Positions 42,486 to 58,520 of a stretch of 64,000 nucleotides of DNA are shown here, in pieces. The stretch's first letter is position 1. Each line of letters opens with the position of its first letter. The position numbers and the translations under genes were made by a program. The notes under the pieces were generated by a model that made no database searches, was not told where the DNA came from, and saw only the letters and a list, made by a program, of their open reading frames with translations. Where the stretch lies: the sequence record PQ471516.1; one strand, 5' to 3'.

Positions 42486-42695
42486 ATGGAAAAGTTTTAT
42501 AGTTCACTACTTCTATCTACTGAACTTGTATCATTTATGGTGTGCAAGACTAAGAAAGATTATTACATTAATAATCCAAATCCTTTAAATGATATAGAGC
42601 TATCACTTAAATTTGTAAATTGTACTGAAAATATATTAAAGTACAACAATAAAGTTTATTTTAATGTATTGAAATTGATATTTGTATATAACTAA
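42486..42695 (+). CDS. hypothetical protein
   Basis: GAGG SD. Confidence 0.65.
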   Translation: MEKFYSSLLLSTELVSFMVCKTKKDYYINNPNPLNDIELSLKFVNCTENILKYNNKVYFNVLKLIFVYN

Positions 42696-42720
42696 AAAGC
42701 CAGTACAAAGTACTGGCTTT
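42696..42720. terminator. bidirectional terminator closing the propeller array
   Basis: AAAGCCAGTAC-AAA-GTACTGGCTTT. Confidence 0.9.
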
Positions 42721-42723
42721 ATT

Positions 42724-43929
42724 TTATATACCACGACTGGGTATTTGATATAATTGGAATTTAGTGTAGTAATCAGAAACTGTCGTCCCTGCTGCTTGTG
42801 GGATATAGCCACTCAAATACACATCCCCTTGATTATCCATATACACTGTTGTACATTCACTTGAACAGAATAACTCGGTGTTAGATACTTTAGGAGCATC
42901 AACTGGTGTTACAAATGTAGTACTTGATGTTGTATTACCGCGACCGAGCTTACCATACGTGTTTATACCACACATATAAAGTGAATCGGCAGTTTTAACC
43001 GTAAGCCCACCATATGTTAATGAATTTGATTTCATTTCCATATCATCTGATATTGGTAGAGTGGAGATAGTGGATAATACTGTCCAAGAATTAGCGGATG
43101 AACCATTACCCAAGTTACCATCGGACTGAATCCCACTTGCACGAACTGTATATGTATTATTCGTGTTGTGTTTATATACAACCCATGATGCACTCCCACC
43201 GAGTTCATAATGTATAACAGTATTGTTGGCGAATGCACCCATTTGTGTCCATACTCTAATGTTAGTTGCATCATTACTTATACCAAGAGAACCCCATGTG
43301 TTTTGACCAGTGACCCAAAGTGTTTTATCAATTTTTTGCACAATCACTGCACTTGAACCTGTTTTAACACTATCCACATTCGTATTAATTGACGTAAAAG
43401 TTGATAATCTTGTGGTTGTGTTATTACCAAAATATCCCTGTGTATTCGCCCCCATTCCATATAGCGTACCATTTTCAAGTAAAACAAAAATACCCTCACC
43501 TACAAGTTGAATGTCCTTAATTTGGGACAATTGTGTAGCATTGAATACTGATGTAAAATATGAAGTACAATCAGTATAAGTACTGGCAGTACTTAAACCT
43601 GCACCAATAGCTTTACCAACCCCACTATAATAAAATTTATTATCTTCAGTTTGGATTAAATTAAAAGTACCTTGGGCTGTTCTGAAACGTTTTACATTTT
43701 GGTATATTAAAGTCCATTCTTTTACTTTCGCATTATGTACACCATTTCCGAATCCATAGTTTTGTGAAGTAGTTCCACCTATACCCATTAAGTCTCCATT
43801 TTTATATAATAGTAAGAGTGCTGTCGCTGGAATTACTGACGCACTATAACCATTGTACATAAAGATTTCTTTCACTTCAGGAACTTTCATTTTATTAGCG
43901 TACTTAACCATTCTTGTAAAAGGTAACAT
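42724..43929 (-). CDS. RCC1/BLIP-II-like beta-propeller, array gene 1 (tag MLPFTRMVKYAN)
   Basis: GQNTWGSLG and GINTYGKLGRG repeats. Confidence 0.85.
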   Translation of the reverse strand: MLPFTRMVKYANKMKVPEVKEIFMYNGYSASVIPATALLLLYKNGDLMGIGGTTSQNYGFGNGVHNAKVKEWTLIYQNVKRFRTAQGTFNLIQTEDNKFYYSGVGKAIGAGLSTASTYTDCTSYFTSVFNATQLSQIKDIQLVGEGIFVLLENGTLYGMGANTQGYFGNNTTTRLSTFTSINTNVDSVKTGSSAVIVQKIDKTLWVTGQNTWGSLGISNDATNIRVWTQMGAFANNTVIHYELGGSASWVVYKHNTNNTYTVRASGIQSDGNLGNGSSANSWTVLSTISTLPISDDMEMKSNSLTYGGLTVKTADSLYMCGINTYGKLGRGNTTSSTTFVTPVDAPKVSNTELFCSSECTTVYMDNQGDVYLSGYIPQAAGTTVSDYYTKFQLYQIPSRGI

Positions 43930-44001
43930 AAAATCCTCCTTTATTCATTATACTATATTTAGCCAAAAAGGAAAAGCCAGTACTTGAGTACTGGCATTAT
44001 A
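43930..44001 (-). repeat. array spacer R1 (terminator-late promoter-SD)
   Basis: GCCAGTAC-TCAA-GTACTGGC-T tract-TAAATATAGTATAAT-AAGGAGG. Confidence 0.9.
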
Positions 44002-45345
44002 TTATTGTAAAGGTATTTCAGTTAAGGTGCTATATTGTGTTCCGTTATATATACCCCTCCAGTATAATTTACCTTCAGTACTAATAACTAATAAACCATA
44101 TGTTGTAAACCCTAGAGTTCCTCCGACATACATAGCATCTTTTATTCTAATACCAATGTCTTCATATGTAAACTCTGATACTTCACCAGCATTCCACGCT
44201 GGACTGTAATAATAATCAGTATAAACACCATGTGCTTTATATAGGGACGTCAATCCAGGTTCAAAAATTACAGTTCCGCAGTAGTTCATTCTTATTTTAG
44301 TACTGGATGAAGTTGGTATATTACCAAAAATATTATCTTTTAACCCAGTAGTTAGAACGTTGAAACCACCACCAATGGAGTTAACGTTATTCACGCCACT
44401 TAGACTCATACCAACGTTGTATCCCATGCAATACACACTACTGCTACCATTCCAGTAAGAAAAACCGCCGCCACGACCACAACGATATAATTGTGAATTT
44501 GAACAGTACATCATACCTTCGTTTGATGCGTCATAGTCGTCTGCTGTTCCAATTGTAGCTACAGTAGTCCAAGTTTTAATTACTTGGTTTGCACTAGCTG
44601 GTGTTTGTATGCCATATCTGATATTATATCCCTTACCGACTATGGTCCCATCTAATAATTTGGCATACAGTACTGGTCTAGCCCCATTATAATAAACGTT
44701 ATTATGTGACATATCAATTGTACTTCGTAATGAAACTGCTTTTTGTGTCAATTGGTTATCTTTAGTAAAAGATGAAAAGTAGTAATCTGCTGTGGAGTTG
44801 TTTATTAAACCCTGAAAGGACTGACCCATATACCAGACTTCTCCGTTTGAGTTCAATGCTGCCAAAATACAACTATATTTGGATGTGTACCCAGTATTAG
44901 TGCCTGGACCTTTATCATACCCACCACTGAATACCATATCAACGACATCACCAACGCTAGTGAAATATGACGAAACATCGATGAATCCAGATGTTAAAAA
45001 TGGTGCAGTCGTCATCCCTGTATTTGTGAATATTCCATTTGCATATACACCACAAAAATTATACGAACCATCAATATCCTGTACTATGATACCATTAGAA
45101 AGTAACCAAAAGTTTTTTACATTTTTACGAACCAATTCAACACCTGCACCATTATTAGGAGTTATTCCAAATGTAATTGCTTTAGTTGTGCCCATGCCAT
45201 ATAAATTCCCATTGGTTGCTAATATTGCACCAAGCCAGTTTCCACCTCCATTACTATTACGACCCATACCAATGGAATCGAATTTCTTTACAGTTGGAGC
45301 TTCTACTGTATTCCCATAATCAAATAATCTAACAAAAGGTAACAT
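44002..45345 (-). CDS. beta-propeller, array gene 2 (MLPFVRLFDYGN)
   Basis: Divergent RCC1-like repeats. Confidence 0.85.
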   Translation of the reverse strand: MLPFVRLFDYGNTVEAPTVKKFDSIGMGRNSNGGGNWLGAILATNGNLYGMGTTKAITFGITPNNGAGVELVRKNVKNFWLLSNGIIVQDIDGSYNFCGVYANGIFTNTGMTTAPFLTSGFIDVSSYFTSVGDVVDMVFSGGYDKGPGTNTGYTSKYSCILAALNSNGEVWYMGQSFQGLINNSTADYYFSSFTKDNQLTQKAVSLRSTIDMSHNNVYYNGARPVLYAKLLDGTIVGKGYNIRYGIQTPASANQVIKTWTTVATIGTADDYDASNEGMMYCSNSQLYRCGRGGGFSYWNGSSSVYCMGYNVGMSLSGVNNVNSIGGGFNVLTTGLKDNIFGNIPTSSSTKIRMNYCGTVIFEPGLTSLYKAHGVYTDYYYSPAWNAGEVSEFTYEDIGIRIKDAMYVGGTLGFTTYGLLVISTEGKLYWRGIYNGTQYSTLTEIPLQ

Positions 45346-45355
45346 ATATTCCTCC

Positions 45356-46535
45356 TTAAACTTGTGGTAGTGGATATTCTGTTAAAGTCCATGTTCCAAC
45401 AACTGTTCCAATTGGTGACCTACCCGTGTAATATAATTTATTATCCGCATACACAAATAATGCACCATCATTGGCAGCAACCAATGAGGTATCTGGATCA
45501 AATACCAAAGAGCTTGGAAATTGTGTTTGAACGAAAACAGACGCATTGTTAGTAGAGTTGATACCGAGTTGCCCCTGGTTATTATACCCAGTACCAAAAA
45601 TACGTTTCCCATTTCTATACAATATACCCCTTGAACTTTGCGAATGTAGTGGTATAAATTCAAAATCGGAAACATCAGTTAATTGTAAATAAGTACTTTG
45701 TGGAGTTAATGATGTCTTATTAGTATTGGTTGTAATTCCATTACCTAATTGTCCGCACTACTTGTGCTCCTACGCCATATAGCGGATAAGTACCATCTGA
45801 ATAAAGAACTATACCCAACATATTAGTATGTGAAAAAATATCAATGGGATATTTCCCAGTACCAAAATCATACTTTGTCCAACTCGTTAATGTAGCCGAA
45901 GCAGCACCAGTTAACAACGTACCAGAAGTAGTTTTGCCACATCTCCACGCAGTATTATCATTCTTAATTATCCAAGTTGGACTATTAAAAAATGAACTAA
46001 CCTTTTTGACATTAATATTAACCTGAGTTAATGATGTAAGCATTTCTGAAGTAGTACCTAACTCATATGTAGAATTGTCACCTATAGCATAAAGAATCCC
46101 ACTATTTGTCAGTACAAACATATTACGAGCATTAGGATATATCTCTTTAATATTATCTATATCGATACTAGAAAAATAAGAAGTACATTCAACAAATGTA
46201 GTACTTTGTACAGGACTTGATGTACCTGTCCAAATATCCCAACCTGCATAATAAAATTTATTATCATTTGTCTGTACTAAACTAAATGAAGCATTCCTGG
46301 TGCACCAGAAATTTTTCACATTTTGCATTAAGAGAACCCAGTTGTTCTGTGTAGTAGTATCTCCAAGTCCGAAAATACCAGCGTTGTTTCCTCCTATACC
46401 CCATAAATCACCATTCTTATACAGAAGCATTAATGTATTGTTGATAAACGCCGATGGTGCTTGCATCTTAATTACATTAGATTCATAAACAGGTTTAATA
46501 TTCCCGTACTTAACCATTCTAGCAAAAGGTAACAT
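45356..46535 (-). pseudogene. beta-propeller, array gene 3, frameshifted near 45757
   Basis: GAQ|GQLGNG broken by one extra base; the downstream frame continues to 45356. Confidence 0.75.
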
Positions 46536-46606
46536 ATATTCCTCCTTTATTCATTATACTATATTTAATCAAAAAGAAAAGCCAGTACTTGAGTACTGGC
46601 TTTATC
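46536..46606 (-). repeat. array spacer R2
   Basis: Near-identical to R1. Confidence 0.9.
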
Positions 46607-47758
46607 TCAATAAACATCCCAAGGTAATGGTGTCTTTCTAAACCCATACCTAGTTGCGTTCTGCCCATCTCCGGCAATGTATCTACCTGTACCACACTGA
46701 TATAATTCAGTACTGCTACATATCGCACCACCAATAGTACCACTACCCCACTGAGTTATATTGGAATATAATATTGGCAAATCACTACATTTAGTATATA
46801 ATGCAACAGTAGCAGCACCACTCGCACCACCAAAAACACTTCGGTTCGAACCCGTGTAATATATACCATCTGGACTCATAAATGCGGAAGTATAAGTTGT
46901 ACTACAATCCACTGGACTTCTTATATTATTAAGATCACTTGGGTATACCCTAGCACCATATGTGTATACATTACCTGTAGTAGTAATACCATTACCTAAC
47001 TGACCATTATTTTGTCCACCACATGTAACTAACGATCCACTACCAGAAACAATGGCAGTAGCATTATAAGAAGTACCTATAACAATAGAAGCTCCCGCCA
47101 ATAGGTATGGGGCAGGAACTCCGGCTGCATTCCCCTGACCTAATTCACCATTGACATTTCTTCCCCATCCGTATACAGAAGTGGTATCCAATTGGCATAG
47201 TACTGAACCATAACTAAACGTATATCGTATATCCTTCACTGCCGATGGTAAACCACTAACTTTAGTTGCAACACTAATAATGCCTGAAACGCCTGTAACT
47301 CCAGCGTTCGCGTTCATATTACGTCCATATGCATATAAAGAGCCATCAGCAGTTTTAATATGCATCATGCCATCTGTGCAATATAATGTATCTATACTAC
47401 CCACTGCAACCTCTCCCATACTGGACGTTATATCGTTCCACCCAAGCGTTGTAGTACTAGAAATTAAGTTATTTCCGGCGTAAAGTATTCTATTATCATT
47501 AGTAACTACTACTGTATAATTGGCAGTAACGCCAATTAATCTAACTTTCTCGTATATCTTAGACCACATTCCTATTGAATTTGTGTTAGTATCCAGAAAC
47601 CCCAACTGACCAGCGGTATTATATCCAATACCCCACACATCACCTTCACTATCCAATAACACTTCATGGGAAAAACCAATCTTAAAATCTTTTATCGTTG
47701 GTGTTTCTGGAACAGGTTTAATATTTCCGTACTTAACCATTCTTGCAAAAGGTAACAT
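46607..47758 (-). CDS. beta-propeller, array gene 4 (MLPFARMVKYGN)
   Basis: Start moved; GYNTAGQLG, GRNVNGELG. Confidence 0.85.
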   Translation of the reverse strand: MLPFARMVKYGNIKPVPETPTIKDFKIGFSHEVLLDSEGDVWGIGYNTAGQLGFLDTNTNSIGMWSKIYEKVRLIGVTANYTVVVTNDNRILYAGNNLISSTTTLGWNDITSSMGEVAVGSIDTLYCTDGMMHIKTADGSLYAYGRNMNANAGVTGVSGIISVATKVSGLPSAVKDIRYTFSYGSVLCQLDTTSVYGWGRNVNGELGQGNAAGVPAPYLLAGASIVIGTSYNATAIVSGSGSLVTCGGQNNGQLGNGITTTGNVYTYGARVYPSDLNNIRSPVDCSTTYTSAFMSPDGIYYTGSNRSVFGGASGAATVALYTKCSDLPILYSNITQWGSGTIGGAICSSTELYQCGTGRYIAGDGQNATRYGFRKTPLPWDVY

Positions 47759-47828
47759 ATTCCCTCCTTTATTCATTATACTATATTTAATCAAAAAGAA
47801 ATGCCAGTACTTGAGTACTGGCATTATG
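47759..47828 (-). repeat. array spacer R3
   Basis: Near-identical to R1. Confidence 0.9.
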
Positions 47829-49019
47829 TTATAACTGTCTCGGTGTATCCAGTACATATCTAGTTGTGCTAGGACCACCATCATCATAAGTTCCGGTTGA
47901 ATATATATTTTTCATATCAGCAGTTAGGAAAGTACGATACGAACCGCGATATATTTTTATTTTATCATACATAGAATATGTTATTTCTGACGGCAATGGA
48001 CATGCAGTAAATTTACCAATGGTAACATTAGAACCAACACCTAATGTACCAGCATAACCACTCGCATTTAAACCAGTTGCATATACACCATTACTCGTAA
48101 CTAGTATACTAGATTGTGCTACATATCCAGTATGGATTGAATAATAAGTTCCTGATGGTAATGTAGTACTATTATTCCCTAATACTGCTAGTGCTGTACT
48201 ATTCGTGGTGTTATTACCCCATGCCCCATTATTAGCGTTACCACCTACTAGGAACTGACGTGCTCCTGTACTTGGATTCTCTACTAAAGCACTGACAGCA
48301 CCAATTGAACAACCAGTATATTGTAATGTTTTTGTATATGTGGTACTTGGCTTATACAAAGTATATTCATTAAATGGTGTCCATGTGGTACTAGTACTTA
48401 TACCAGATGTACTACCACCAATATATAAATTATTTTGTGTATCAAAAAACATTACACAGTAATTTGTTGACTGTATTTGTGCAATATCTACATCTGGTGT
48501 TACCGCTTTAACAAATGAACCATCTGATATTTGATAAGTAGTTCCTGTACCATCTGCGAATTGTCTAGCACTATTCCACCCTGTACTCCATATTGTATTA
48601 TTATCCATTAAGAAAGTAAACCACGTAGTACCTGCATACATCTGTTTAATTGAAGTACTTGAACTTTGTGTGTACAAATTTTCAATATATTGGTTATAAC
48701 TTAAAAATGATGTAGTACTAGTTTCTAAACCAATATGACTACCATATCCACAATAAAAATAATTTAAGTTCTTATCTTGAACTAACAAAGTTCCTTGGGT
48801 CATCCAGCAATCTTTGACATTTTCTCTAATTAATGTCCACGACCTTACTGCATTATTATTTCCTCTACCAAACTTCCCAAAACTATTACTGCCTCGTGCG
48901 TATAGTTGACCGTCGGTATAAAGTACAACAACCTCAGTATCAGTTGGTATTATTTTCTTAATTTGAAGAGGTTCAGGTGTGATATTCCCATAATCAAACA
49001 ATCTAACAAAAGGTAACAT
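47829..49019 (-). CDS. beta-propeller, array gene 5
   Basis: GSNSFGKFGRG, TIWSTGWN. Confidence 0.85.
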   Translation of the reverse strand: MLPFVRLFDYGNITPEPLQIKKIIPTDTEVVVLYTDGQLYARGSNSFGKFGRGNNNAVRSWTLIRENVKDCWMTQGTLLVQDKNLNYFYCGYGSHIGLETSTTSFLSYNQYIENLYTQSSSTSIKQMYAGTTWFTFLMDNNTIWSTGWNSARQFADGTGTTYQISDGSFVKAVTPDVDIAQIQSTNYCVMFFDTQNNLYIGGSTSGISTSTTWTPFNEYTLYKPSTTYTKTLQYTGCSIGAVSALVENPSTGARQFLVGGNANNGAWGNNTTNSTALAVLGNNSTTLPSGTYYSIHTGYVAQSSILVTSNGVYATGLNASGYAGTLGVGSNVTIGKFTACPLPSEITYSMYDKIKIYRGSYRTFLTADMKNIYSTGTYDDGGPSTTRYVLDTPRQL

Positions 49020-49029
49020 ATTTCTCTCC

Positions 49030-50160
49030 TTAATTTAGTAATGCCCCTGGCAAATCCACTTTGACGAATTGTGCATATGCTGAGGAATTTTGATCAAAGT
49101 TTGGTCCCAATCCATAAAATGAGCTAATGCCGTCTTCATTTGTGTATATGATATAAACGTTCTTTACATCATTTCCGCATATAAATCGAATGTCTTTCGT
49201 TTGTGTTCCCGCTGGAACATTACGAAGGTTAACAACGCCATTACTTGCATTGTTATCAGCCGACGCAATTGGTAATTGATTTTGATCATATTGACCACGC
49301 ATATTTTTTGCATCTAAACCAAACACAGTATTTGATACCGCACCAACTTTCAAAAATGAACCAAAACTATTATTGAATGACTTTGGAAATTTACCACTAT
49401 AAACACTTCTCCCATCTGATAATACCGCTGAACTGAATGCCCCGCTATTCGATATGGCAAATTCATTGTAAGGAAGTGTACCCATTTTGGTATATACAGA
49501 ATATGAATTAGTGGAAGTATTATCAATAATCTTATTACCATTATATCCAATACCATACTGGTATCCGTCTGCATCTTGAACTATACACAAAGGACCACTT
49601 GGGGTTTGTGTCAACGAAACAACACGTTCAACTTGTATATCACCAAATGTATTTCTTCGCCATGTTCTATCTATTATAGTACTAGTATTACCCAAAGATA
49701 ATGCCACACTATATAATAGATTGTTTTCAGTAAAAATGGCAACATAATATGCGTGGTTAATAACTTGCTTCATCCCAGCATCAATAACTTCCTGTGGAAT
49801 ATGATCAGTAACATCCAACCAATCAAGGTTAGATGATGCAATATCTGGAGTACTGAATTTGTCAAATCTAGTTGAGCCACAAACTAGCACTCTATCATCA
49901 TTTGTCAAAGCCACTGTGCTAGTCTGCATATTAGAACTGAATGATTTAACATTACTAATGTTAGACTTGTACCAACCCTTATCAGCAGCACCCACCGTGA
50001 ATCCGGTTCCCATTGATCCACTTGTACTTGTACCATAAGCCCACATCTCACCACTATATGTTAGTGCCATACAGTGGCTTCCATTTGCTTGGAAATCCTT
50101 TATACCAGTGGGAGCAACCACTGTATTCCCATAATCAAACATTCTAACAAAAGGTAACAT
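49030..50160 (-). CDS. beta-propeller, array gene 6
   Basis: Start moved to MLPFVRMFDYGN. Confidence 0.85.
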   Translation of the reverse strand: MLPFVRMFDYGNTVVAPTGIKDFQANGSHCMALTYSGEMWAYGTSTSGSMGTGFTVGAADKGWYKSNISNVKSFSSNMQTSTVALTNDDRVLVCGSTRFDKFSTPDIASSNLDWLDVTDHIPQEVIDAGMKQVINHAYYVAIFTENNLLYSVALSLGNTSTIIDRTWRRNTFGDIQVERVVSLTQTPSGPLCIVQDADGYQYGIGYNGNKIIDNTSTNSYSVYTKMGTLPYNEFAISNSGAFSSAVLSDGRSVYSGKFPKSFNNSFGSFLKVGAVSNTVFGLDAKNMRGQYDQNQLPIASADNNASNGVVNLRNVPAGTQTKDIRFICGNDVKNVYIIYTNEDGISSFYGLGPNFDQNSSAYAQFVKVDLPGALLN

Positions 50161-50235
50161 AACTAAAATCTCCATATAATAATTATAATGTATTTACAAA
50201 AAAATACCAGCACATATTTCAGTACTGGTATAATG
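50161..50235 (-). promoter_or_regulatory. variant array spacer (terminator + TAAATACATTATAAT + GGAG)
   Basis: TACCAG...CTGGTA-T7 hairpin; same promoter shape. Confidence 0.75.
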
Positions 50236-51417
50236 TTATGGTAAAATAATAGCTTGTAACGAACTCATACCCAATGTTGGAACACTCGCCTGTGGTGCTG
50301 GTGCATTCACTTTTGGTGATGAAACCGCATAAGTCATTCCTGTACCCAAATCTGGATCAAAAACTACAGCACAATAATTCCCACTATATATAAGTCCATT
50401 CTTGTATCCTTGTGCACTTTGAATGCATTTCGTGAACGTACCAATATCTGTAGTGGCATTTATTAAGTTCCTCCCACGATAACCGCAGGTGTATATGAAA
50501 TTATCATCGCCTATGTACATACTAGAATCCCCAGAAGAACTACATAGATACGACATATAAGCACGCATGTTTTTAGGAGCAACTGACAATGTACCTGCAT
50601 AGAATTTATTATTCGAACCCGTAATATCACCATCACCCAATGCACCAAAACTTCCCCAGCCAGTACCGTAATATCTCTTATCACTCAAAAATATAATACA
50701 GTTGTTATTACACATCTTGATTTGATATATCAATGAAGGATCAACCCCAGGGAATGATTCAGTGTATGTTAGAACAGCCAGATCAGTACTAGCATTACAT
50801 TGATGATATGTATTAGTACCAGCAGACAATATTGTACCATCAACTAATAGAATCCTCGAAGTGCCAGTACCAGCAATACAAGCAACAGCATTACCTGCAC
50901 TTCCGGTGTATATTTGTCTGAAAGTAAAGAAACCAACAGTCTTACTCCCCTGTCCACTCCAACCAGTATTATCAACACCACATGCCCATACTGAACCATC
51001 TTGCATGATCATCATTACACCATAACGTTCTATTGAAATATAGACAATCTTCGTAGTATCAACTGCACTAAATCTAGAAGTTATATCAGTCCAAACCTTT
51101 ACACTCACCGCCGTCGCACCGAAAGTAGGATCTTCCCCTGCTATCATTATCCTACCATTGTTAGTCAGATACATTGTCTGACTATAACCAGTACTACAAA
51201 ACTTAACACTATCAGTCTCTGGAACTTTTAACCACTCGTTGTAACGTGTTACGTTAGTGTTATTACCTAACTGATAATAGTTATTCATCCCAGATACATA
51301 TAACACACCATCCTTTATTAAACTATAAGTCGCACTATAGTCACTACAGGTATAACGTGTACCCACAGGTCGCTCAACGACGTTCCCATAATCAAACATT
51401 CTAACAAAAGGTAACAT
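50236..51417 (-). CDS. beta-propeller, array gene 7
   Basis: GMNNYYQLG, GTNTYHQC. Confidence 0.85.
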   Translation of the reverse strand: MLPFVRMFDYGNVVERPVGTRYTCSDYSATYSLIKDGVLYVSGMNNYYQLGNNTNVTRYNEWLKVPETDSVKFCSTGYSQTMYLTNNGRIMIAGEDPTFGATAVSVKVWTDITSRFSAVDTTKIVYISIERYGVMMIMQDGSVWACGVDNTGWSGQGSKTVGFFTFRQIYTGSAGNAVACIAGTGTSRILLVDGTILSAGTNTYHQCNASTDLAVLTYTESFPGVDPSLIYQIKMCNNNCIIFLSDKRYYGTGWGSFGALGDGDITGSNNKFYAGTLSVAPKNMRAYMSYLCSSSGDSSMYIGDDNFIYTCGYRGRNLINATTDIGTFTKCIQSAQGYKNGLIYSGNYCAVVFDPDLGTGMTYAVSSPKVNAPAPQASVPTLGMSSLQAIILP

Positions 51418-51489
51418 AATTCCCTCCTTTATTCATTATACTATATTTAATCAAAAAGAAATACCAGTACTCAAGTACTGGCATTGTGT
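51418..51489 (-). repeat. array spacer R4
   Basis: Near-identical to R1. Confidence 0.9.
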
Positions 51490-52668
51490 TTATCTAAAAG
51501 GTACGCACTTTTTGAATTTAAATATATATCCAGTCTCACCTTGTTCAGTGAAGTACCCAGGGTTTCCAGTCCAGTATAAATCCTCACCTATACTAACTAC
51601 CGATACTGAACCATTACCAATTGAACCAAACCACTCAACATGTGATAAGTCAACACTATCATCAAAGAATTCTATTGGTAATATTGAACCATAATTCCCA
51701 GAGACTGCGTTGCGGCCTAAACCAGCACCATTAGAATTATATCCCTTACCATTCGTATTAATAATGTTAGTACTGGATTTTATTGCATTAACATAGGATA
51801 CTGGTGAAAGTTTATCGAATGAATTTGCTGTTATATCGGTATAGGGATTTGTAGTAAATGATGATCTTATGATACCAGTATTTTCAGACCCACCTATAGT
51901 CAACTGTGTGTTCCAACCAGCCGCCATTAAAGACAAAGCAGATGTACTACTTTGAACAATCAAACGTGTTACCCATCGTGTAGCTTGTACTGCAATTACC
52001 TGAGAACTTCCAAGATTCAATGTAGTAAAAGTAGTAATTGGATTATTATCACCTGTTCCTAATTGATAAAAAGTATTCTCACCACAACGATAATATATAC
52101 CATCTTTTATATAGTGAAAGTTTCTGCTCATTTCACTAGATGCAATTGCAGTTACACTAGTGTCAATTAAGAGTGGAGATGTAATTGGTGCAGTTGCTGT
52201 ACCCAATTCACTTGCACCATTCATGCCTATACCATATAACTGACTGTCACTTGTGAGTATTAGCATAGAATTGTTAGTACTGGTTGTAGATGTTATTTTT
52301 ATATCTTTTATAGAACTCGGAGAAATAGATCCAAAATATGATTCACAACGAGTCCATGTTGAAACAGAAGATGATATACCAAAAACTGAGTTAGTCCCAC
52401 TATAGTACAATTCCCCTTGTTTTGTTCTAATTATAGTACAATATAAAGAACTCCAGAAATCATCAACACTATAAGGACATAAAACCCATCTATTAAAAAA
52501 GATGAACCAGTAACTCCCATTTTTGCTGATTGGTTTCCGTCCACGCATATATAATGACCCGTCACTATATAATACGCTTATTGAATTTTCATCACTATTA
52601 ATTTTAACAACAGTATCTTTGACAGGGGCAACATTCCCATAATCAAACAATCTAACAAAAGGTAACAT
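51490..52668 (-). CDS. beta-propeller, array gene 8
   Basis: GMNGASELG, GENTFYQLG. Confidence 0.85.
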   Translation of the reverse strand: MLPFVRLFDYGNVAPVKDTVVKINSDENSISVLYSDGSLYMRGRKPISKNGSYWFIFFNRWVLCPYSVDDFWSSLYCTIIRTKQGELYYSGTNSVFGISSSVSTWTRCESYFGSISPSSIKDIKITSTTSTNNSMLILTSDSQLYGIGMNGASELGTATAPITSPLLIDTSVTAIASSEMSRNFHYIKDGIYYRCGENTFYQLGTGDNNPITTFTTLNLGSSQVIAVQATRWVTRLIVQSSTSALSLMAAGWNTQLTIGGSENTGIIRSSFTTNPYTDITANSFDKLSPVSYVNAIKSSTNIINTNGKGYNSNGAGLGRNAVSGNYGSILPIEFFDDSVDLSHVEWFGSIGNGSVSVVSIGEDLYWTGNPGYFTEQGETGYIFKFKKCVPFR

Positions 52669-52739
52669 ATATTCCTCCTTTATTCATTATACTATATTTA
52701 ATCAAAAAGAAAAGCCAGTACTCAAGTACTGGCATTTTT
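52669..52739 (-). repeat. array spacer R5
   Basis: Near-identical to R1. Confidence 0.9.
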
Positions 52740-53909
52740 TTAAATTGGCGAGTCCAACACAAACTCTAACGTATTTGGACCACCATAAGTCACATATGTA
52801 CCTGAACTATATACGAAATTACCATCAGTAATATAAGTACGATAGTATGATCCAGCCATTTGTGCCTTACTATAATCAAACCCATCAGGTACGATTGCTT
52901 TGGTATATACTAATGCATTCTTAGATGTACCAATACCTAACATACCAGCTTGCGTAGATTGATTGTAGCCGCAACAATATATACCATCTGTTGTAGCAAT
53001 AACTTGGTTATAATATGAAGTATTGTTAGCAATACTTACTACATCACCGGGTGGCATTAGTGAAGCAGTTTGAACCTCAAATGCTCTATAATCACTGAGA
53101 GAACCATTTGTCCCATCTGCTTGTGCACCAAATATTCTCGAACCGCCATTTGCGATGATGGTTTTACCAGTGGGATCAGTACCAATTGCCATTGCCATTG
53201 AAGTACTATTCTCCACATAGTACTTGATATTAATTGTATTTCTTAAGCTGGTAGGAGCACCATAATATATATTATATAACTTACCTCCTGAACTTGTAAC
53301 TGCATTTACTCTTCCTGTATAAAATAGCCATCCTTGGTTTGTAACATAACCGTGCATTAAATTACTTGCAAACAATTTAACAGGTAATTGATTTGCTGCG
53401 GTCGGAACAGTACTTTTGACGAATCTACGAGCAATATTGTTAGTTGTTGTCCCATCACCCAACTGACCATCCGACCCTACTCCAGTACTCCATATTGTTT
53501 GGTCTGATAGTAACACACTTGTAGTCTGATAACTAACGGCTATATCTAATATTGGTAATGTTAATGTATTGAATGTTGGCATAGCAGAAGTCCATATTGA
53601 TACTGCTGCCCCTGGCATACCAACAGTTGTTGAACTTCCACTGTACCATATTTCATTATTGCTTTTCTTAACAACTATCGACGTGGTTCCCATCCAAAAA
53701 TCTTCAACACCAGAAGTACTAAAAGTCCATGTAGTAACAGTATTTTCGTGACCTAAACCCAAAATACCATTTGTATTATCACCACGCACATATAAATCAC
53801 CACTGTTTGTTAAAACAGCAACATTATAGTTGTTAGTAAGTATTTTTTTAATATTTGGTTTAGCAGGTGCAACATTTCCATAATCAAACAATCTCACAAA
53901 AGGTAACAT
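52740..53909 (-). CDS. beta-propeller, array gene 9 (closest to gene 5)
   Basis: Start moved; GDNTNGILG, GSDGQLGDG. Confidence 0.85.
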   Translation of the reverse strand: MLPFVRLFDYGNVAPAKPNIKKILTNNYNVAVLTNSGDLYVRGDNTNGILGLGHENTVTTWTFSTSGVEDFWMGTTSIVVKKSNNEIWYSGSSTTVGMPGAAVSIWTSAMPTFNTLTLPILDIAVSYQTTSVLLSDQTIWSTGVGSDGQLGDGTTTNNIARRFVKSTVPTAANQLPVKLFASNLMHGYVTNQGWLFYTGRVNAVTSSGGKLYNIYYGAPTSLRNTINIKYYVENSTSMAMAIGTDPTGKTIIANGGSRIFGAQADGTNGSLSDYRAFEVQTASLMPPGDVVSIANNTSYYNQVIATTDGIYCCGYNQSTQAGMLGIGTSKNALVYTKAIVPDGFDYSKAQMAGSYYRTYITDGNFVYSSGTYVTYGGPNTLEFVLDSPI

Positions 53910-53978
53910 AATTCCTCCTTTATTCATTATACTATATTTAATCCAAAAGAAAAGCCAGTACTTTGTACTGGCATTATA
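53910..53978 (-). repeat. array spacer R6
   Basis: Loop AAA, otherwise as R1. Confidence 0.9.
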
Positions 53979-55118
53979 TTATTTCCACGGTAGAAGTGAA
54001 TCAGGAACCCTTGTTGGTACAGTAGTTGAAGACATTCCAGTAAGATTGGGTACACCACATGTGTATAAATTATCATATTCATCCACTAACATCGTATAGG
54101 AATAGCTCTTACAAAAACTACTAACATTACGAACTTCTAATGCAGTAAGATCCATTTCAGTGAATGATGTTATATACATATCAGTTGTACCAATACCACA
54201 TTGACCATTTGAATTAAGACCACATGAAAATAACTTATTATTATTTTTAATTATACAGGATGGCCCTGTAAGGTTTGTCCCAAGCTCACCCACCAACTCT
54301 ACTTCGCCTTGGAATGATAAATTTGGAATTAATGTACTCATTGGGGCTACTGACCTATTTCCTGTACCTGCTTGTCCATATTCATTAGTAGATGCAACTT
54401 TAACATTACCATCATTAAGAAATATATAAGAAGTTTCATTTGTATTTACTGCTTTAATTGCATTACTAATTGAAGTATCTTGTGTAAATATGAGCAAGTT
54501 TTGTGTCGTCGTTCCTGATACAAACGTATTACCTGCATACCAATATGAACCATCATTTAGAACTAATCCAGTACTACGTATTGCACAACCAGCACTGATA
54601 ACATTTTCTATTGTACTATAGGTGAATTGTGTAACGCTTGAAGTTGATCCATTTCCAAAAACACCACCAGTGCCAGCACCACAGTAGAACCACTTTCCAT
54701 TTTTTAAAAATACACGCATACACGAAGATATTACAATACTATCAATATCATCTGCACTGACTCCGATATCAGCAAAGTGCTGTGTTACATCAATCCAAAC
54801 ACCGTTAGTGTTTGAAGATATCACCGGAATAACAGTACGTCTACCAGTGTACCAAATAGTACCATCTTTCTTAATAGCAATCGTTCCTTGTACCCCGACC
54901 CAATATCGTACAATATTTGAGTTGACAAGAGTCCATTCAGTTGAAGAATCCAATGAACCATTACCACCTTGACCATATGCTGAAGAACCAAACCAGTATA
55001 GATAGCCATTTGTGTGTAAATAAAATTTGGCATCAGCAGAGCATTGTAACCTATTTTTAGGTAGGATCGGTTCAGGAGCGATATTCCCGTAATCAAACAA
55101 TCTAACAAAAGGTAACAT
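53979..55118 (-). CDS. beta-propeller, array gene 10
   Basis: GSSAYGQGG, GLNSNGQCG. Confidence 0.85.
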   Translation of the reverse strand: MLPFVRLFDYGNIAPEPILPKNRLQCSADAKFYLHTNGYLYWFGSSAYGQGGNGSLDSSTEWTLVNSNIVRYWVGVQGTIAIKKDGTIWYTGRRTVIPVISSNTNGVWIDVTQHFADIGVSADDIDSIVISSCMRVFLKNGKWFYCGAGTGGVFGNGSTSSVTQFTYSTIENVISAGCAIRSTGLVLNDGSYWYAGNTFVSGTTTQNLLIFTQDTSISNAIKAVNTNETSYIFLNDGNVKVASTNEYGQAGTGNRSVAPMSTLIPNLSFQGEVELVGELGTNLTGPSCIIKNNNKLFSCGLNSNGQCGIGTTDMYITSFTEMDLTALEVRNVSSFCKSYSYTMLVDEYDNLYTCGVPNLTGMSSTTVPTRVPDSLLPWK

Positions 55119-55130
55119 ATTTCCTCCTTA

Positions 55131-56027
55131 TTATTTAAAAACATACTGCGTATTAACACGAGTACCATTGTCAAAACCAAGTACGTAAAATATTTCAGCA
55201 CTATTATTAGAACCAAATAATGCACCCGTACTATTACTCAAAGTAGTATTAACTGCTAAGGCAATCCATATGTCTTCTTCTGTATCGTATCTCAATAAAT
55301 TTAATGCACCAAACGATACTGCATATATATGTTTATCATATCTATTGTAAATTATTTTACTAGGGTTAGGACCACCAACCGATGCTATGTTCGACCATAC
55401 CCCACTCTCTATATGATATTTTTGTGCAGTACTAACACCTTGACCCGTAATATATATGTAAGTACCATCCGTACACATATCACCACCTCCAGTGTTATTT
55501 GTACCATCGCTTGTACCTAATGATGACCATGTATTAGTACTAGGAGTATAACTGTATAACGAATTATTAGAAGGAGATCCCCACAAATATAACTTATCCC
55601 CAGCATTAATCATCTTACTATACGCCAGTTGACTAGGCTTCCCAATACTGTTAGTGTTCAGAATCCAGGTATTTGTACTTATATTATATACATAAAAATT
55701 ATTAGAACTATTACCACTACCACCAAACAAATATATTTTTCCCTGATAAGCACATAACGCACTACCAAATGTAGATACAGGTGCATTGGCTAATTGTAGC
55801 CACGTTCTAGTAGTTAAATTAAAACTCCATAACTGATTATCCGTCGTCACCGTATTCTGTATACCACCAAATATATAAGCAGTATTCTTTTCCGCATCAT
55901 ATGTATAACCAAAGTTATTTCGTGCTGAAGGTACGGGTGTTGTAGTAAATGGGGATCGTACTCCACCATTGTTGGCATATGGTGGTACAACATTCCCATA
56001 ATCAAACAATCTCACAAAAGGTAACAT
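55131..56027 (-). CDS. Kelch-repeat beta-propeller, array gene 11 (same N-terminal tag)
   Basis: YIFGG...W and IYLFGG...YNISTNTW Kelch repeats; start moved. Confidence 0.88.
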   Translation of the reverse strand: MLPFVRLFDYGNVVPPYANNGGVRSPFTTTPVPSARNNFGYTYDAEKNTAYIFGGIQNTVTTDNQLWSFNLTTRTWLQLANAPVSTFGSALCAYQGKIYLFGGSGNSSNNFYVYNISTNTWILNTNSIGKPSQLAYSKMINAGDKLYLWGSPSNNSLYSYTPSTNTWSSLGTSDGTNNTGGGDMCTDGTYIYITGQGVSTAQKYHIESGVWSNIASVGGPNPSKIIYNRYDKHIYAVSFGALNLLRYDTEEDIWIALAVNTTLSNSTGALFGSNNSAEIFYVLGFDNGTRVNTQYVFK

Positions 56028-56098
56028 AATTCCTCCTTTATTCATTATACTATATTTACCCCAAAAAGAAATGCCAGTACCTGAGTACTGGCATTATA
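56028..56098 (-). repeat. array spacer R7
   Basis: Near-identical to R1. Confidence 0.9.
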
Positions 56099-57208
56099 TT
56101 ATTTTGGTAAATCAATTTTAGTAAAGACTGCAACATCTGCACTTGCACCTGGTATTGCATAAAATATACCAGTACTATATACATCCCCGTCTTTGGTTAA
56201 TAATGATGTTAATCCGTCACTAAAAGCAACATCACTAATCTCACTAACTTCTACAGGTAATTGTAAATTGGTAGCACTATAGATAGCACCCGTTTGAGAA
56301 TTGTTTAATCCCAAACCACGGTTTGCCCCAATACCTTTCTGATATGCACTGGTTAGTATAATTTGCGTAGCCGTGCTTGTTGCCTCTGAATTTGTCATAA
56401 ACAAAGGTGAATTATTAGGTAAAGTACTTACAGGAACTGCTTTGAATGTAGTTGAATCTGAACTAAGAAAGTTTGGAGTTGTACCACATGTGAAATATGA
56501 TGTAGCATTATAGTAATTGAGTGTATGACCACCAATAGCTGCATCTATTACACCAGAACTACGCAGTCCCCAAATGTTAACTTGTGTTCTGTCCCCTGTG
56601 CCATGTAACCCACGGTCATTCCACCCTGAACTATATAACTTATTATCTAAGGTAATATACATACTATCATTGGAAGTTGACATCACTTTACGCACATTAG
56701 AAGCACATAGTGTTAATGTATATATTGATGAAGAACCAATCCCCAATACACCACGGTATCCATTAGCCCCAGCACCATAGAGTACTGAACTTGAACTGAG
56801 TACAAATATTACACCACCATTGCATACAATATTAGCAATTTGATTCACAGGAATTGTATTTGTAAACCACTCCGTTCTATCAACTAATGTAGTACTGTAA
56901 GAAGTTGTTGTTGATGATGTGAACCAATATGTTTCACCGGATGTCCATATCGTATTGTCATTTTTAATAATAACAAGTGTTCGTCCTCCAGTGAAAAAAT
57001 TAGAAACATCTGCACTTACTAATATCCATGAAGATACCGTGTTTTTATTACCATTTCCAGATTCACCACCTTGATTTCTGCCTATGTAATATAATTCATG
57101 TGAATCAGTCAATACGAATTGACCTTGTGTAGAAGCACCAACTTTAATTATATTTTTAGGACCAGGGGTAATATTCCCATAATCAAACAGTCTTACAAAA
57201 GGTAACAT
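56099..57208 (-). CDS. beta-propeller, array gene 12
   Basis: GRNQGGESG, GWNDRGLHG. Confidence 0.85.
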   Translation of the reverse strand: MLPFVRLFDYGNITPGPKNIIKVGASTQGQFVLTDSHELYYIGRNQGGESGNGNKNTVSSWILVSADVSNFFTGGRTLVIIKNDNTIWTSGETYWFTSSTTTSYSTTLVDRTEWFTNTIPVNQIANIVCNGGVIFVLSSSSVLYGAGANGYRGVLGIGSSSIYTLTLCASNVRKVMSTSNDSMYITLDNKLYSSGWNDRGLHGTGDRTQVNIWGLRSSGVIDAAIGGHTLNYYNATSYFTCGTTPNFLSSDSTTFKAVPVSTLPNNSPLFMTNSEATSTATQIILTSAYQKGIGANRGLGLNNSQTGAIYSATNLQLPVEVSEISDVAFSDGLTSLLTKDGDVYSTGIFYAIPGASADVAVFTKIDLPK

Positions 57209-57217
57209 AATTCCCTC

Positions 57218-58420
57218 CTATTGTTGCCATAACTGCGTTGGCATTAATGTTAGTGTAGTAATACTATAAGTGCCATCAGGCAATCTACCACCATTACCAT
57301 TCCAGCCACCACATGCATATAATTTATAATCTTTAGTAATTATTATGGTTCTGCTCCAATCTTTAGATGCCATAAGAACATTGTCATAACCACCACTTAT
57401 TGCACTAAGATTAAAAATATTCCAGGTTCTAACTAATGTATTAGTTCCATTACCTTCTTGACCATATGAGTTAGCACCACTACTTCTAACATATGATGGG
57501 TATTGTGCCATAGGTGAACCAATTGATGAAGTTCCCATATTACTTGGACAAATAAAATTACTGTACTTACTTACATCAACCGTGACCGATGTGTTCCTAA
57601 TTGGTGTTAGCTGATTTACAGATGTAGTCGTACCATTACCAGCTTCTCCTGTATTGTTAACCCCGCTATAATATACAGGCCCACCAGTAGTAAACCACCA
57701 AGTAACATTGTATGTAGCACTAATATGTTCTACATCACTAATCACATATTTGTTCAAATATATCATAGAACTACCACCACAACCACTTTCACCGAAGTTA
57801 TCCTTACCACAAAACCATGCCTGTTTATTTGATTTAATATAGTGCGTTCCTTGTAATGAACATGCCATATCAATAACTTCACCCATATTAGTCATAACTG
57901 TTAGTGTAGGTATGGAATTTTGATTACCAGACCCACATTCACCATTAGTATTTTTTCCACACGCAATTACTCTATTATCGGTTAATAATATTCTAGTACT
58001 TTCACCTATATATACACTCTTGATCATATTAGCCATGACGCCAATTTTATTAAATGAAGAAGTAACATCAGTCCATGTTCTCAAATAACCACCAACAGGT
58101 GTTGCATCTCCATAATCAGAAAATGCAGCCACCGACCCAGTGTAGTATATTTTATTATCCAAATCAATCATCAATGAACCATGAACACCAAGCCAATAGG
58201 CTGCACAGTTCCTTGCAAGTACTGTAAATGACGAAACTGCTGCTGAATTCCCAAGACCCAATTGAGACAAGTTATTACTACCATAACCATATAAAGTATT
58301 AGTTGGGCTATGTAGATACATACAGTTTGTATAATGTTGTTGTAAAACATTTGAGAACTCTATTGGTTCTGGCCCTGGTGCAATATTCGCGTACTTAACC
58401 ATTCTAGCAAAAGGTAACAT
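57218..58420 (-). CDS. beta-propeller, array gene 13 (MLPFARMVKYAN)
   Basis: GSNNLSQLG, GKNTNGECG; closest to gene 10. Confidence 0.85.
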   Translation of the reverse strand: MLPFARMVKYANIAPGPEPIEFSNVLQQHYTNCMYLHSPTNTLYGYGSNNLSQLGLGNSAAVSSFTVLARNCAAYWLGVHGSLMIDLDNKIYYTGSVAAFSDYGDATPVGGYLRTWTDVTSSFNKIGVMANMIKSVYIGESTRILLTDNRVIACGKNTNGECGSGNQNSIPTLTVMTNMGEVIDMACSLQGTHYIKSNKQAWFCGKDNFGESGCGGSSMIYLNKYVISDVEHISATYNVTWWFTTGGPVYYSGVNNTGEAGNGTTTSVNQLTPIRNTSVTVDVSKYSNFICPSNMGTSSIGSPMAQYPSYVRSSGANSYGQEGNGTNTLVRTWNIFNLSAISGGYDNVLMASKDWSRTIIITKDYKLYACGGWNGNGGRLPDGTYSITTLTLMPTQLWQQ

Positions 58421-58520
58421 ATATTCCTCCTTTATTTGTTATATCATATTTACCCAAAATAAAAACCCTTGACACGCTTCTTGGACTAATGTAGAATAGA
58501 AAGAAATTAAGGAGAAATGT

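What the first reader, a model, noticed from the sequence alone, without database searches (positions are those of the whole stretch)
42696..58460. 15.7-kb cassette array of 13 divergent beta-propeller genes, most with their own terminator-promoter-SD repeat
Seen: seven near-identical ~70-nt spacers plus one variant (GCCAGTAC-TCAA-GTACTGGC terminator, TAAATATAGTATAAT, AAGGAGG). Together with the conserved first ~12 codons they form ~105-bp direct repeats, while the gene bodies are highly diverged. Four junctions are SD-only. Each standard hairpin carries two AGTACT sites 2 nt apart. Known: RCC1/BLIP-II and Kelch propellers are binding scaffolds. Inference: a recombination-driven accordion library of interchangeable late binding proteins (receptor-binding tips or inhibitors), integron-like in layout but with no integrase here.
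Basis: partly seen in the sequence, partly recalled or inferred. Interest (0 to 1): 0.9.

Follow-up and report, generated by a model that had tools for sequence, protein, structure and literature searches.

The report
Shuffled virion-protein cassette array, jumbo phage
A giant E. coli phage carries 13 tandem genes for particle-associated binding proteins, each with its own stop-start signal and the same 12-residue N-terminal tag, and close relatives carry different sets in different orders, which makes this a natural swap-in, swap-out library.

Summary
The window is Escherichia phage Turkey5, an Asteriusvirus-type jumbo phage. On the minus strand, 42696-58550 holds 13 tandem genes. Eleven are RCC1-like propellers (one of them truncated), one is Kelch, and one is a weak RCC1-like match. 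Seven near-identical 69-72-nt spacers and one variant each carry a terminator hairpin, TAAATATAGTATAAT and an SD. Four junctions are SD-only. All 13 genes begin MLPFxRxxxYGN.

Across eight related phages the same site holds 9-17 cassettes of 34 types, in different orders. Two phages with 99% identical flanks differ by six cassettes, and the indel joints fall inside the shared SD and first codons. This is shuffling by homologous recombination, closest to the PeSL cassettes of T4-type phages and not to integrons.

Published mass spectrometry finds these proteins in virions of phAPEC6, GAP32 and CBB. The tag also heads Kelch, LamG-like and other bodies in three further genera, and it is modelled outside the propeller. 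The best reading is a late-expressed, interchangeable set of virion-docked binding modules. Whether they sit on the outside (favoured) or are packaged inside is unresolved.

The paralogue array and its virion association were already published. The cassette grammar, the tag and the turnover were not. I rate it a new variant of a known kind.

The parts
58421..58550 (-). Region upstream of the array: promoter-like TAAATATGATATAAC (58438-58452) and an SD for the first cassette. It is divergent from the + strand small-ORF block.
57218..58420 (-). Cassette 1 (type B), 400 aa, RCC1-like, with the MLPFARMVKYAN tag
56099..57208 (-). Cassette 2 (type C), 369 aa, RCC1-like. A 9-nt SD-only junction lies upstream.
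56028..56098 (-). Standard spacer: hairpin, T-run, TAAATATAGTATAAT and AAGGAGG
55131..56027 (-). Cassette 3 (type ag), 298 aa, Kelch propeller with the same tag
53979..55118 (-). Cassette 4 (type S), 379 aa, RCC1-like. A 12-nt SD-only junction lies upstream.
53910..53978 (-). Standard spacer (3-nt loop; one AGTACT site)
52740..53909 (-). Cassette 5 (type X), 389 aa, RCC1-like
52669..52739 (-). Standard spacer
51490..52668 (-). Cassette 6 (type L), 392 aa, RCC1-like
51418..51489 (-). Standard spacer
50236..51417 (-). Cassette 7 (type E), 393 aa, RCC1-like
50161..50235 (-). Variant spacer: a longer-loop hairpin, TAAATACATTATAAT and a weaker SD
49030..50160 (-). Cassette 8 (type Q), 376 aa, RCC1-like
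47829..49019 (-). Cassette 9 (type D), 396 aa, RCC1-like. A 10-nt SD-only junction lies upstream.
47759..47828 (-). Standard spacer. This copy was the query.
46607..47758 (-). Cassette 10 (type A), 383 aa. It is modelled as a 7-bladed RCC1-like propeller with a free N-terminal tag.
46536..46606 (-). Standard spacer
45346..46535 (-). Cassette 11 (type G), broken. It gives a shortened 264-aa RCC1-like product, followed by an RCC1-like remnant in another frame, so there is at least one frame disruption. Orthologues in WPEC3, 121Q and phAPEC6 are in the same state. An SD for cassette 12 lies at its 3' end.
44002..45345 (-). Cassette 12 (type M), 447 aa, a divergent member with only a PHROG RCC1-like hit
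43930..44001 (-). Standard spacer
42724..43929 (-). Cassette 13 (type U), 401 aa, RCC1-like
42696..42720 (-). Terminal hairpin terminator of the array. It can act in both directions and is shared with the convergent + strand genes.

Best explanation
This is a hyperplastic locus of an Asteriusvirus jumbo coliphage that encodes an interchangeable set of virion-associated binding modules. Each cassette has three pieces. The first is a regulatory unit of an intrinsic terminator hairpin, a late-type promoter (TAAATA-N3-TATAAT) and an SD. The second is 12 shared codons for an N-terminal tag, MLPFxR(L/M)(F/V)(D/K)Y(G/A)N. The third is a divergent body of 300-450 aa, either an RCC1-like or a Kelch beta-propeller. 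SHOWN: the anatomy; the propeller folds; the tag modelled outside the fold; cassette number, content and order differing among close relatives; indel joints lying in the shared SD and first codons; and the tag's conservation at peptide level on at least four body types in four genera. FROM PAPERS: these proteins are found in purified virions. INFERRED: (1) The shared unit of about 105 nt is the homology on which the phage's general recombination machinery deletes, inserts and re-orders cassettes, as PeSL elements do in T4-type phages. Because each cassette carries its own terminator and promoter, every rearrangement stays expressible. (2) The tag is a common docking signal that brings whatever cassette products a given phage encodes to one class of site on the particle. 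(3) The bodies are ligand-binding faces, most likely displayed on the outside of the particle, where they add or change adhesion to host-surface structures. The set is therefore under diversifying, host-driven selection.
For: Anatomy.
Folds: Pfam RCC1/WD40_RLD and Kelch hits. The AF2 models have pLDDT 89 and 85.5. Foldseek gives TM 0.65-0.79 to UVR8, RPGR, HERC2 and RCC1.
Tag outside the fold: residues 1-20 have pLDDT 44-62 in both models.
Turnover: 102 proteins from 8 phages fall into 34 types, with 9-17 per phage, no type present in all eight, and order changes such as E-Q before or after B-C and A-D versus D-A. Turkey5 and JNE01 have 99% identical flanks but differ by six cassettes.
Joints: the JNE01 E-D and A-M junctions switch partner inside the SD-ATG-first-codon repeat.
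Distribution of the repeat unit: it occurs at 3-16 places in each of 37 Asteriusvirus genomes.
DNA-level homogenisation: synonymous sites of codons 2, 3, 4 and 6 are invariant and include non-preferred codons.
Peptide-level constraint: the same tag, with other codons, is found in Salmonella phage Munch, Erwinia phage Hallingskeid and Pectobacterium phage CBB. There it sits on RCC1-like, Kelch, Laminin_G_3 and unassigned bodies.
Virion association: phAPEC6 gp003, 005, 006, 007, 009, 010, 549 and 551 (PMC7247149); GAP32 gp001 and CBB_548, 549, 551, 552 and 553 (PMC5259590).
Late class: in the 64-kb window the exact motif occurs only upstream of array genes and of one phrog_10468 virion structural gene. 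The 121Q tail-fibre gene has AATAAATATAGTATATA upstream, and the CBB paper reports ATAAATA as the late motif of this clade.
Composition: 12.8% charged and 42% S/T/N/G/Q residues, with pI 5.0-8.6, resembles extracellular binding domains and not DNA binders. Bacterial homologues carry secretion or surface domains.
Precedent for a short docking peptide on secondary receptor-binding proteins: PMC13352976 abstract.
Against: No experiment locates these proteins on the particle or shows a ligand. Virion mass spectrometry cannot tell outside from inside, and peptide counts are low (1-7). The hairs of CBB and phAPEC6 are far longer than a 40-kDa globule, so any link to them is speculative. The promoter differs from the canonical late box found upstream of the 121Q capsid and scaffold genes, and it overlaps a good sigma-70-type -10 element, so its timing class is not proven. 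The recombination joints are inferred from comparing finished genomes; no event was observed. Homogenised synonymous sites could instead reflect an mRNA-level constraint on translation initiation.
Confidence: 0.6

Rival explanations
1. The cassette products are internal head proteins. In this reading the N-terminal tag works like the capsid-targeting sequence of T4 internal proteins. It loads the propellers onto the scaffolding core, and they are packaged with the DNA. They would then either help build the inner body seen in 121Q and phAPEC6 or be ejected into the cell to bind host factors such as defence proteins. An arms race of that kind would explain the turnover.
For: A short linear N-terminal tag on otherwise unrelated, hypervariable virion proteins is the T4 internal-protein pattern (established knowledge, from memory). 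These phages have T4-type capsid, scaffold and prohead-protease genes. An inner body is reported for 121Q and phAPEC6, and the phAPEC6 authors name the RCC1-like proteins as candidates. The proteins are in virions. RCC1-like/BLIP-II scaffolds can be protein inhibitors.
Against: No conserved acidic residue or other shared motif follows the tag where a T4-type maturation cleavage would be expected. The bodies are lectin-like or adhesin-like folds (Kelch/NanM-like, Laminin_G_3) with low charge. A folded 7-bladed propeller is wide for passage through a tail tube (inference). The proteins are neutral to acidic, so DNA organisation is unlikely.
Confidence: 0.22
2. The array is a neutral by-product of tandem duplication in an expanding jumbo genome. 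The repeats simply record duplication history, and differences among phages are random loss with no selected function for the set.
For: Hua et al. (PMC5646251) and the phAPEC6 paper propose tandem duplication as a route of genome growth. One cassette is truncated, and some cassettes in relatives are disrupted.
Against: Paralogues are only about 20% identical, while their 5' units are 87-100% identical. That pattern requires homogenisation or selection. Orthologous types are kept at 72-100% identity across phages and at 40-50% in another genus. The products are made and incorporated into virions. Order changes cannot arise by loss alone.
Confidence: 0.08
3. The products are DNA or chromosome condensation proteins, as many records annotate them, and they organise the packaged genome.
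For: Domain-level similarity to RCC1, the database names and the suggestion in PMC7247149.
Against: The similarity is to the generic 7-bladed RCC1-like fold; the best structural matches are UVR8, RPGR and HERC2. pI is 5.0-8.6 and only 12.8% of residues are charged. Kelch and LamG-like bodies carry the same tag.
Confidence: 0.03
4. The array is an integron-like system in which a site-specific recombinase acts on the hairpins.
For: The layout of short palindromic elements between cassettes, and the sequence-conserved stem (CCAGTAC...GTACTGG) that is kept even in Salmonella phage Munch.
Against: No integrase or recombinase is annotated in the 64-kb window. Every cassette has its own promoter. The two joints examined lie in the SD and first codons and not in the hairpin. 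The same hairpin also ends unrelated + strand genes.
Confidence: 0.03

Closest known systems
PeSL (promoter-early stem-loop) cassettes of T4-type phages (Arbiol et al. 2010, PMC2839356; Comeau et al. 2014, PMC4122927)
   Same: Both are composite units of about 100 bp that combine a stem-loop terminator with a promoter. Both are repeated between non-essential genes of a hyperplastic region. In both, insertions, deletions and replacements between close relatives end in the units. No dedicated recombinase is known for either. The PeSL authors themselves compare their cassettes with integrons.
   Different: PeSLs carry strong sigma-70-type early promoters and flank unrelated ORFans. Here the promoter core is shared with late structural genes. 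The repeat also runs through the SD into 12 coding codons. All cassettes belong to one tagged family of virion proteins. PeSL mini-circles were demonstrated by experiment; nothing of that kind is shown here.
T4 internal proteins with a capsid-targeting sequence (from memory; no sequence comparison made)
   Same: A short conserved N-terminal tag sits on otherwise hypervariable virion proteins that are encoded in a plastic region of a T4-superfamily genome.
   Different: T4 internal proteins are small, and the prohead protease removes their tag. Here the bodies are 30-48-kDa propellers and no shared cleavage motif follows the tag. Packaging inside the head was not tested.
Branched receptor-binding protein systems with a conserved N-terminal docking peptide (Klebsiella phages KP32, K11 and KP34; PMC13352976)
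   Same: A short conserved N-terminal peptide lets interchangeable binding proteins dock to a common site on the particle.
   Different: Those proteins are trimeric depolymerase spikes on podophage tails, with one or two per phage. Here there are 9-17 monomer-like propellers, and the docking partner is unknown.
Integron cassette arrays
   Same: Both are tandem single-gene cassettes separated by short palindromic elements, and content and order vary.
   Different: Integrons need an IntI integrase, attC sites and one common promoter. None of these is present here.
RCC1-like domain proteins (RCC1, UVR8, HERC2 RLD, RPGR, BLIP-II)
   Same: The 7-bladed propeller fold and RCC1 repeat signatures are shared.
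   Different: Sequence identity is only 15-20%, and there is no evidence of GEF or chromatin function. The names 'DNA condensation protein' and 'HERC1 ubiquitin ligase' in the records are misnomers carried over from domain-level similarity.

Membership tests
PeSL-type regulatory shuffling cassettes | Conserved composite element of about 100 bp with a stem-loop terminator next to a promoter, repeated in intergenic sites | tested here: met
   Seven near-identical spacers plus one variant. The unit is present at 3-16 places in each of 37 related genomes.
PeSL-type regulatory shuffling cassettes | The promoter is a strong sigma-70-type early promoter | tested here: inconclusive
   There is a good -10 (TATAAT) but no convincing -35 at 16-18 nt. 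The TAAATA core and the flanking bases are shared with a tail-fibre gene and a virion structural gene, which points to late timing.
PeSL-type regulatory shuffling cassettes | Insertions, deletions and replacements between close relatives are bounded by the elements | tested here: met
   This holds in Turkey5 versus JNE01, WPEC3 and Turkey3. The joints lie in the SD and first-codon part of the unit.
PeSL-type regulatory shuffling cassettes | Excised cassette mini-circles are formed during infection | not testable with these tools
   This needs sequencing reads or PCR from infected cultures.
Integron | Tyrosine-recombinase integrase (IntI) next to the array | tested here: not met
   No integrase or recombinase is among the annotated features of the whole 64-kb window.
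Integron | Promoterless cassettes read from one common promoter, each ending in an attC site | tested here: not met
   Eight of the 13 cassettes have their own promoter-like unit. The hairpins are perfect 8-11-bp stems followed by a T-run, i.e. terminators.
RCC1-like domain (7-bladed propeller) | RCC1 repeat signatures and a 7-bladed fold | tested here: met
   Most members score above the PF00415/PF13540 cut-offs. The AF2 model has pTM 0.88, with TM 0.76-0.79 to UVR8. This was not shown for the 447-aa member, which has a PHROG hit only.
Kelch propeller | Kelch repeats forming a 6-bladed propeller | tested here: met
   Cassette 3 scores 123.6 bits on PF24681 (cut-off 50) and has several Kelch motifs. 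Its AF2 model has pLDDT 85.5.
T4-type capsid-targeted internal proteins | An N-terminal targeting peptide removed by the prohead protease at a conserved site, and a protein located inside the head | tested here: inconclusive
   The conserved N-terminal peptide is present. No conserved residue pattern follows it. Processing and location cannot be tested with these tools.

The most novel reading that the evidence does not exclude
The 12-residue MLPFxRxxxYGN peptide is a clade-wide 'plug' that docks any of dozens of unrelated binding domains (RCC1-like, Kelch, LamG-like and others) onto one socket of the jumbo-phage particle, possibly on the enigmatic hairs. The self-contained late cassettes let populations reshuffle which heads are displayed. 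Each virion would then be a mosaic, multivalent adhesin coat, and the locus would be a natural modular display system that evolves by cassette exchange and not by point mutation.
Probability: 0.3. Interest if true: 0.8.

Novelty: new variant of a known kind. Interest (0 to 1): 0.62.

Why it matters
Rak2-like jumbo phages carry unexplained hair-like appendages and a block of genes mislabelled as DNA condensation or ubiquitin-ligase proteins. Three findings turn that annotation oddity into a defined, testable system. The genes form a terminator-promoter-SD-tag cassette system. The cassettes are swapped among near-identical phages. The same short tag marks mass-spectrometry-verified virion proteins of several folds in four genera. 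The work also extends PeSL-type modular shuffling from early ORFans of T4-like phages to structural-protein genes of jumbo phages. It points to a compact peptide that may be enough to attach cargo to a very large virion, and it corrects misleading database names.

Tried and rejected
1. Several fetched loci never appeared in the script sandbox. I worked around this by passing gene references through align_proteins and analysing the alignment file.
2. The IMG/VR pattern scan returned only the 121Q genome. The metagenome scan found five ENA contigs carrying arrays, but I could not cluster them because they were not available to scripts.
3. A literature search for the tag letters found nothing relevant. 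The 2021 and 2026 jumbo-phage overviews and the phiKp24 structure paper do not mention RCC1, Kelch or propellers. The Sharanji paper has no relevant text. The phAPEC6 supplement with peptide lists is not held, so I could not check whether the tag is retained in virions.
4. The generic sigma-70 scan gave fewer promoter-like sites than shuffles and only weak -35 candidates inside the hairpin arm, so I rejected it as a basis for calling the promoter early.
5. I looked for a shared cleavage-type motif after the tag and found none.
6. I rejected the DNA-condensation reading on composition and the integron reading on missing parts.
7. The two-AGTACT feature holds for 5 of the 7 standard hairpins and follows simply from the palindrome, so I attach no function to it.


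Full report
**Identity of the window.** Megablast of 42600-58600 gives a 100% match over the full length to Escherichia phage Turkey5, PQ471516.1, 351,311 bp. Window position 1 corresponds to record position 287312. Another 36 jumbo phages of E. coli and Salmonella match only 17-35% of the region, in several pieces each. These are Asteriusvirus types such as 121Q, PBECO4 and phAPEC6. The window is otherwise filled with small + strand ORFs, tRNA genes and a sigma-factor gene. The array is an island on the opposite strand, with GC skew reversed over 42-62 kb.

**Checking the observation.** Thirteen minus-strand ORFs lie between 42724 and 58420.
- I printed every junction in the sense orientation. 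Seven are 69-72-nt spacers built as GCCAGTAC-loop-GTACTGGC, a T-run, TAAATATAGTATAAT and AAGGAGG. The 27-nt core occurs seven times exactly, against 0 expected.
- One junction is a variant with a longer loop and TAAATACATTATAAT.
- The first gene has its own related motif, TAAATATGATATAAC.
- Four junctions carry only an SD. Three are 9, 12 and 10 nt long, and the fourth follows a 395-nt gene remnant.
- A hairpin at 42696-42720 closes the array.
- The hairpins fold at -12 to -19 kcal/mol, with z of -3.2 to -5.9, and score as intrinsic terminators.
- All 13 genes start MLPF(V/A/T)R(L/M)(F/V)(D/K)Y(G/A)N, and this motif occurs nowhere else in the window.
- The first 36 nt average 87% pairwise identity, against 37% for the next 36 nt.

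Three corrections to the finding follow. Only five of the seven standard hairpins have two AGTACT sites. One cassette (type G) is broken: it gives a shortened product followed by an RCC1-like remnant in another frame, so it has at least one frame disruption. One 447-aa member is recognisable only through PHROGs.

**What the proteins are.** Pfam finds RCC1/WD40_RLD in eleven members and Kelch in one. An AF2 model of cassette 10 has pLDDT 89 and pTM 0.88. It is a 7-bladed propeller with TM 0.65-0.79 to UVR8, RPGR, HERC2 RLD and RCC1, and phmmer against PDB sequences agrees. The Kelch model has pLDDT 85.5. In both models the first 20 residues have pLDDT 44-62 and lie outside the propeller. The proteins are poor in charged residues, at 12.8% against 24.3% for other ORFs of the window. 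They are rich in S/T/N/G/Q, at 42% against 25%, and have pI 5.0-8.6. That composition fits extracellular binding domains and does not fit DNA binders.

**Comparison with relatives.** I fetched the syntenic locus from JNE01, WPEC3, Turkey3, 121Q, phAPEC6 (cut at the record start), fEgEco12 and Ecwhy_1. I aligned 102 cassette proteins and clustered them at 70% identity or more. They fall into 34 types, with 9-17 per phage, and no type is present in all eight phages. In transcription order the arrays read:

| Phage | Cassette types in order |
|---|---|
| Turkey5 | B C ag S X L E Q D A G M U |
| JNE01 | B C L E D A M P U |
| WPEC3 | F K E Q B C Y L O D P A G M I J |
| Turkey3 | F K ad B W E Q ae af H V N M ab ac I J |
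| 121Q | F R C S D N aa A T G H Z |
| fEgEco12 | F K W E B C O A D N H V ah I J |
| Ecwhy_1 | F K E B C L O D P A I J |

Orthologues are 72-100% identical and paralogues about 20%. Some order changes cannot come from loss alone, for example E-Q relative to B-C, and A-D versus D-A. Turkey5 and JNE01 are 99% identical over the 3-kb left flank yet differ by six cassettes. fEgEco12 and Ecwhy_1 are reported as one species at 97% ANI (PMC13070987), and their arrays also differ.

**Recombination joints.** In JNE01 the E-to-D junction consists of the E-Q variant spacer, then Q-type first codons, then the D body. Type Q is followed by an SD-only junction with three different partners in three phages. 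The JNE01 A-to-M junction consists of the A-G spacer followed directly by M codons. The switch lies within the SD-ATG-first-codon stretch that the two Turkey5 junctions share. The indels therefore end inside the repeated unit, as expected for homologous recombination between units. Within Turkey5 the synonymous sites of codons 2, 3, 4 and 6 are invariant, and non-preferred codons are used. This indicates homogenisation at the DNA level. The 108-nt unit occurs at 3-16 places in each of 37 Asteriusvirus genomes.

**The tag beyond this genus.** Weak hits led to Salmonella phage Munch and Erwinia phage Hallingskeid. A tblastn with the Kelch member led to Pectobacterium phage CBB.
- All three carry tandem arrays whose genes begin M(L/I)PFx(R/K)...Y(G/A)N, with different codons.
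- In CBB the tag heads two Kelch proteins, two Laminin_G_3 (ConA-like) proteins and two 223-aa proteins without a Pfam match.
- In Munch the tag heads a 233-aa member of phrog_6011, 'virion structural protein'.
- The Munch spacer keeps the same stem sequence and TTAAATATAGTATAAT.
- Munch cassettes are 40-50% identical to Asteriusvirus types R and E, so cassette lineages are older than the genera.

The tag is therefore constrained as a peptide and is independent of the fold behind it.

**Published evidence on location.**
- phAPEC6 virion ESI-MS/MS detected gp003, 005, 006, 007, 009, 010, 549 and 551, all from this array. These include orthologues of Turkey5 types X, A and the truncated G (PMC7247149 Table 1; mapping).
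- The CBB paper reports GAP32 gp001 as a structural protein. It lists CBB_548, 549, 551, 552 and 553 in its virion proteome, and it notes multiple RCC1-like copies in 121Q and PBECO4 (PMC5259590).
- The paralogue array and its virion association are therefore already in the literature, including the remark that phAPEC6 has eleven such genes.
- I found no description of the cassette grammar, the tag or the turnover.

**Promoter class.** With no mismatch, TAAATA-N3-TATAAT occurs nine times in the window, always on the minus strand. Eight copies are in the array and one lies upstream of 10604-11761, a phrog_10468 virion structural protein. In 121Q the capsid and scaffold genes have the T4-type late box upstream. 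The tail-fibre gene 607 has AATAAATATAGTATATA, the same core as the spacer. The CBB paper gives ATAAATA as the late motif of the clade. The late box is depleted in this mostly early-type window, with 2 copies against 11.5 expected. I therefore read the spacers as late-type promoters. The call remains unproven, because the motif also contains a good sigma-70 -10 element.

**Mechanism and comparison with known systems.** The closest known system is the PeSL cassette of T4-type phages. PeSLs are composite stem-loop and promoter units of about 100 bp in hyperplastic regions. Recombination between them deletes, inserts and replaces genes and yields mini-circles, without a dedicated recombinase (PMC2839356; PMC4122927). 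This array differs in three ways. The promoter looks late. The repeat continues into 12 codons. All cassettes belong to one tagged family of virion proteins. It is not an integron, because there is no integrase, no attC-type site and no common promoter.

For the tag there are two precedents. One is the docking peptide of secondary receptor-binding proteins in Klebsiella podophages (PMC13352976). The other is the capsid-targeting peptide of T4 internal proteins (from memory). I favour external docking at about 0.5 of the total, for three reasons: the lectin-like and adhesin-like folds, the composition, and the lack of a shared processing motif. Internal packaging stays a live rival at about 0.2. 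It fits the T4-type head genes and the inner body reported for 121Q and phAPEC6.

**Verdict.** The feature is real and non-random. The ligand, the location on the particle and the timing of expression remain inferences. I rate it a new variant of a known kind, with interest 0.62.

Noticed in passing
window 58521-62700, + strand: There is a second tandem family of at least 17 small ORFs of 59-81 aa. They have similar starts (M.EH.EYY...) and hydrophobic ends (..LIYRY..IFKY). [quoted passage not shown] Its copy number also differs among relatives.
   Followed up: partly
window 10604-11761, - strand: This is the only other minus-strand gene in the window. It is a 385-aa member of phrog_10468, 'virion structural protein'. 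It has TAAATACGTTATAAT upstream and its own terminator, and it lacks the tag. By size (42.9 kDa) and strand it is probably the counterpart of phAPEC6 gp077, which was detected in virions with 10 peptides.
   Followed up: partly
window 14263-14281 and 41455-41477: The stem sequence CCAGTAC...GTACTGG of the array hairpins also occurs at two + strand sites outside the array, and it is conserved in Salmonella phage Munch. A stem conserved in sequence, and not only in structure, is unexplained.
   Followed up: partly
whole window: The T4-type late box is strongly under-represented, with 2 copies against 11.5 expected from shuffles. This fits a functional signal that is avoided in an early-gene region.
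   Followed up: no
L006, L007, L008 and L009 (WPEC3, Turkey3, fEgEco12, Ecwhy_1): In these phages one further cassette (type J) lies beyond the + strand 217-aa gene that bounds the array in Turkey5 (homologue of window 41831-42484). The array therefore straddles that gene. In fEgEco12 the promoter end of the array lies about 5 kb from the start of the right 21-kb terminal repeat.
   Followed up: no
public records: The products are variously named 'E3 ubiquitin-protein ligase HERC1', 'DNA condensation protein', 'NS1A-binding protein', 'S-layer protein' and 'Ig domain-containing protein'. All of these names are carried over from domain-level similarity and are misleading.
   Followed up: yes
window 385-4442 and 16594-17556: The left part of the window holds a tRNA cluster (Ser, Ser, Asn, Thr, Thr), an HNH homing endonuclease gene and an RpoS-like sigma-factor gene.
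   Followed up: no
L016-L021 (ENA metagenome contigs OERM01000102.1, OEQX01000370.1, OERK01000968.1, OERM01000014.1, OERD01000139.1): Uncultured relatives carry 1-8 tagged gene starts per stretch at cassette-length spacing. Their cassette types were not compared with the 34 types defined here.
   Followed up: no
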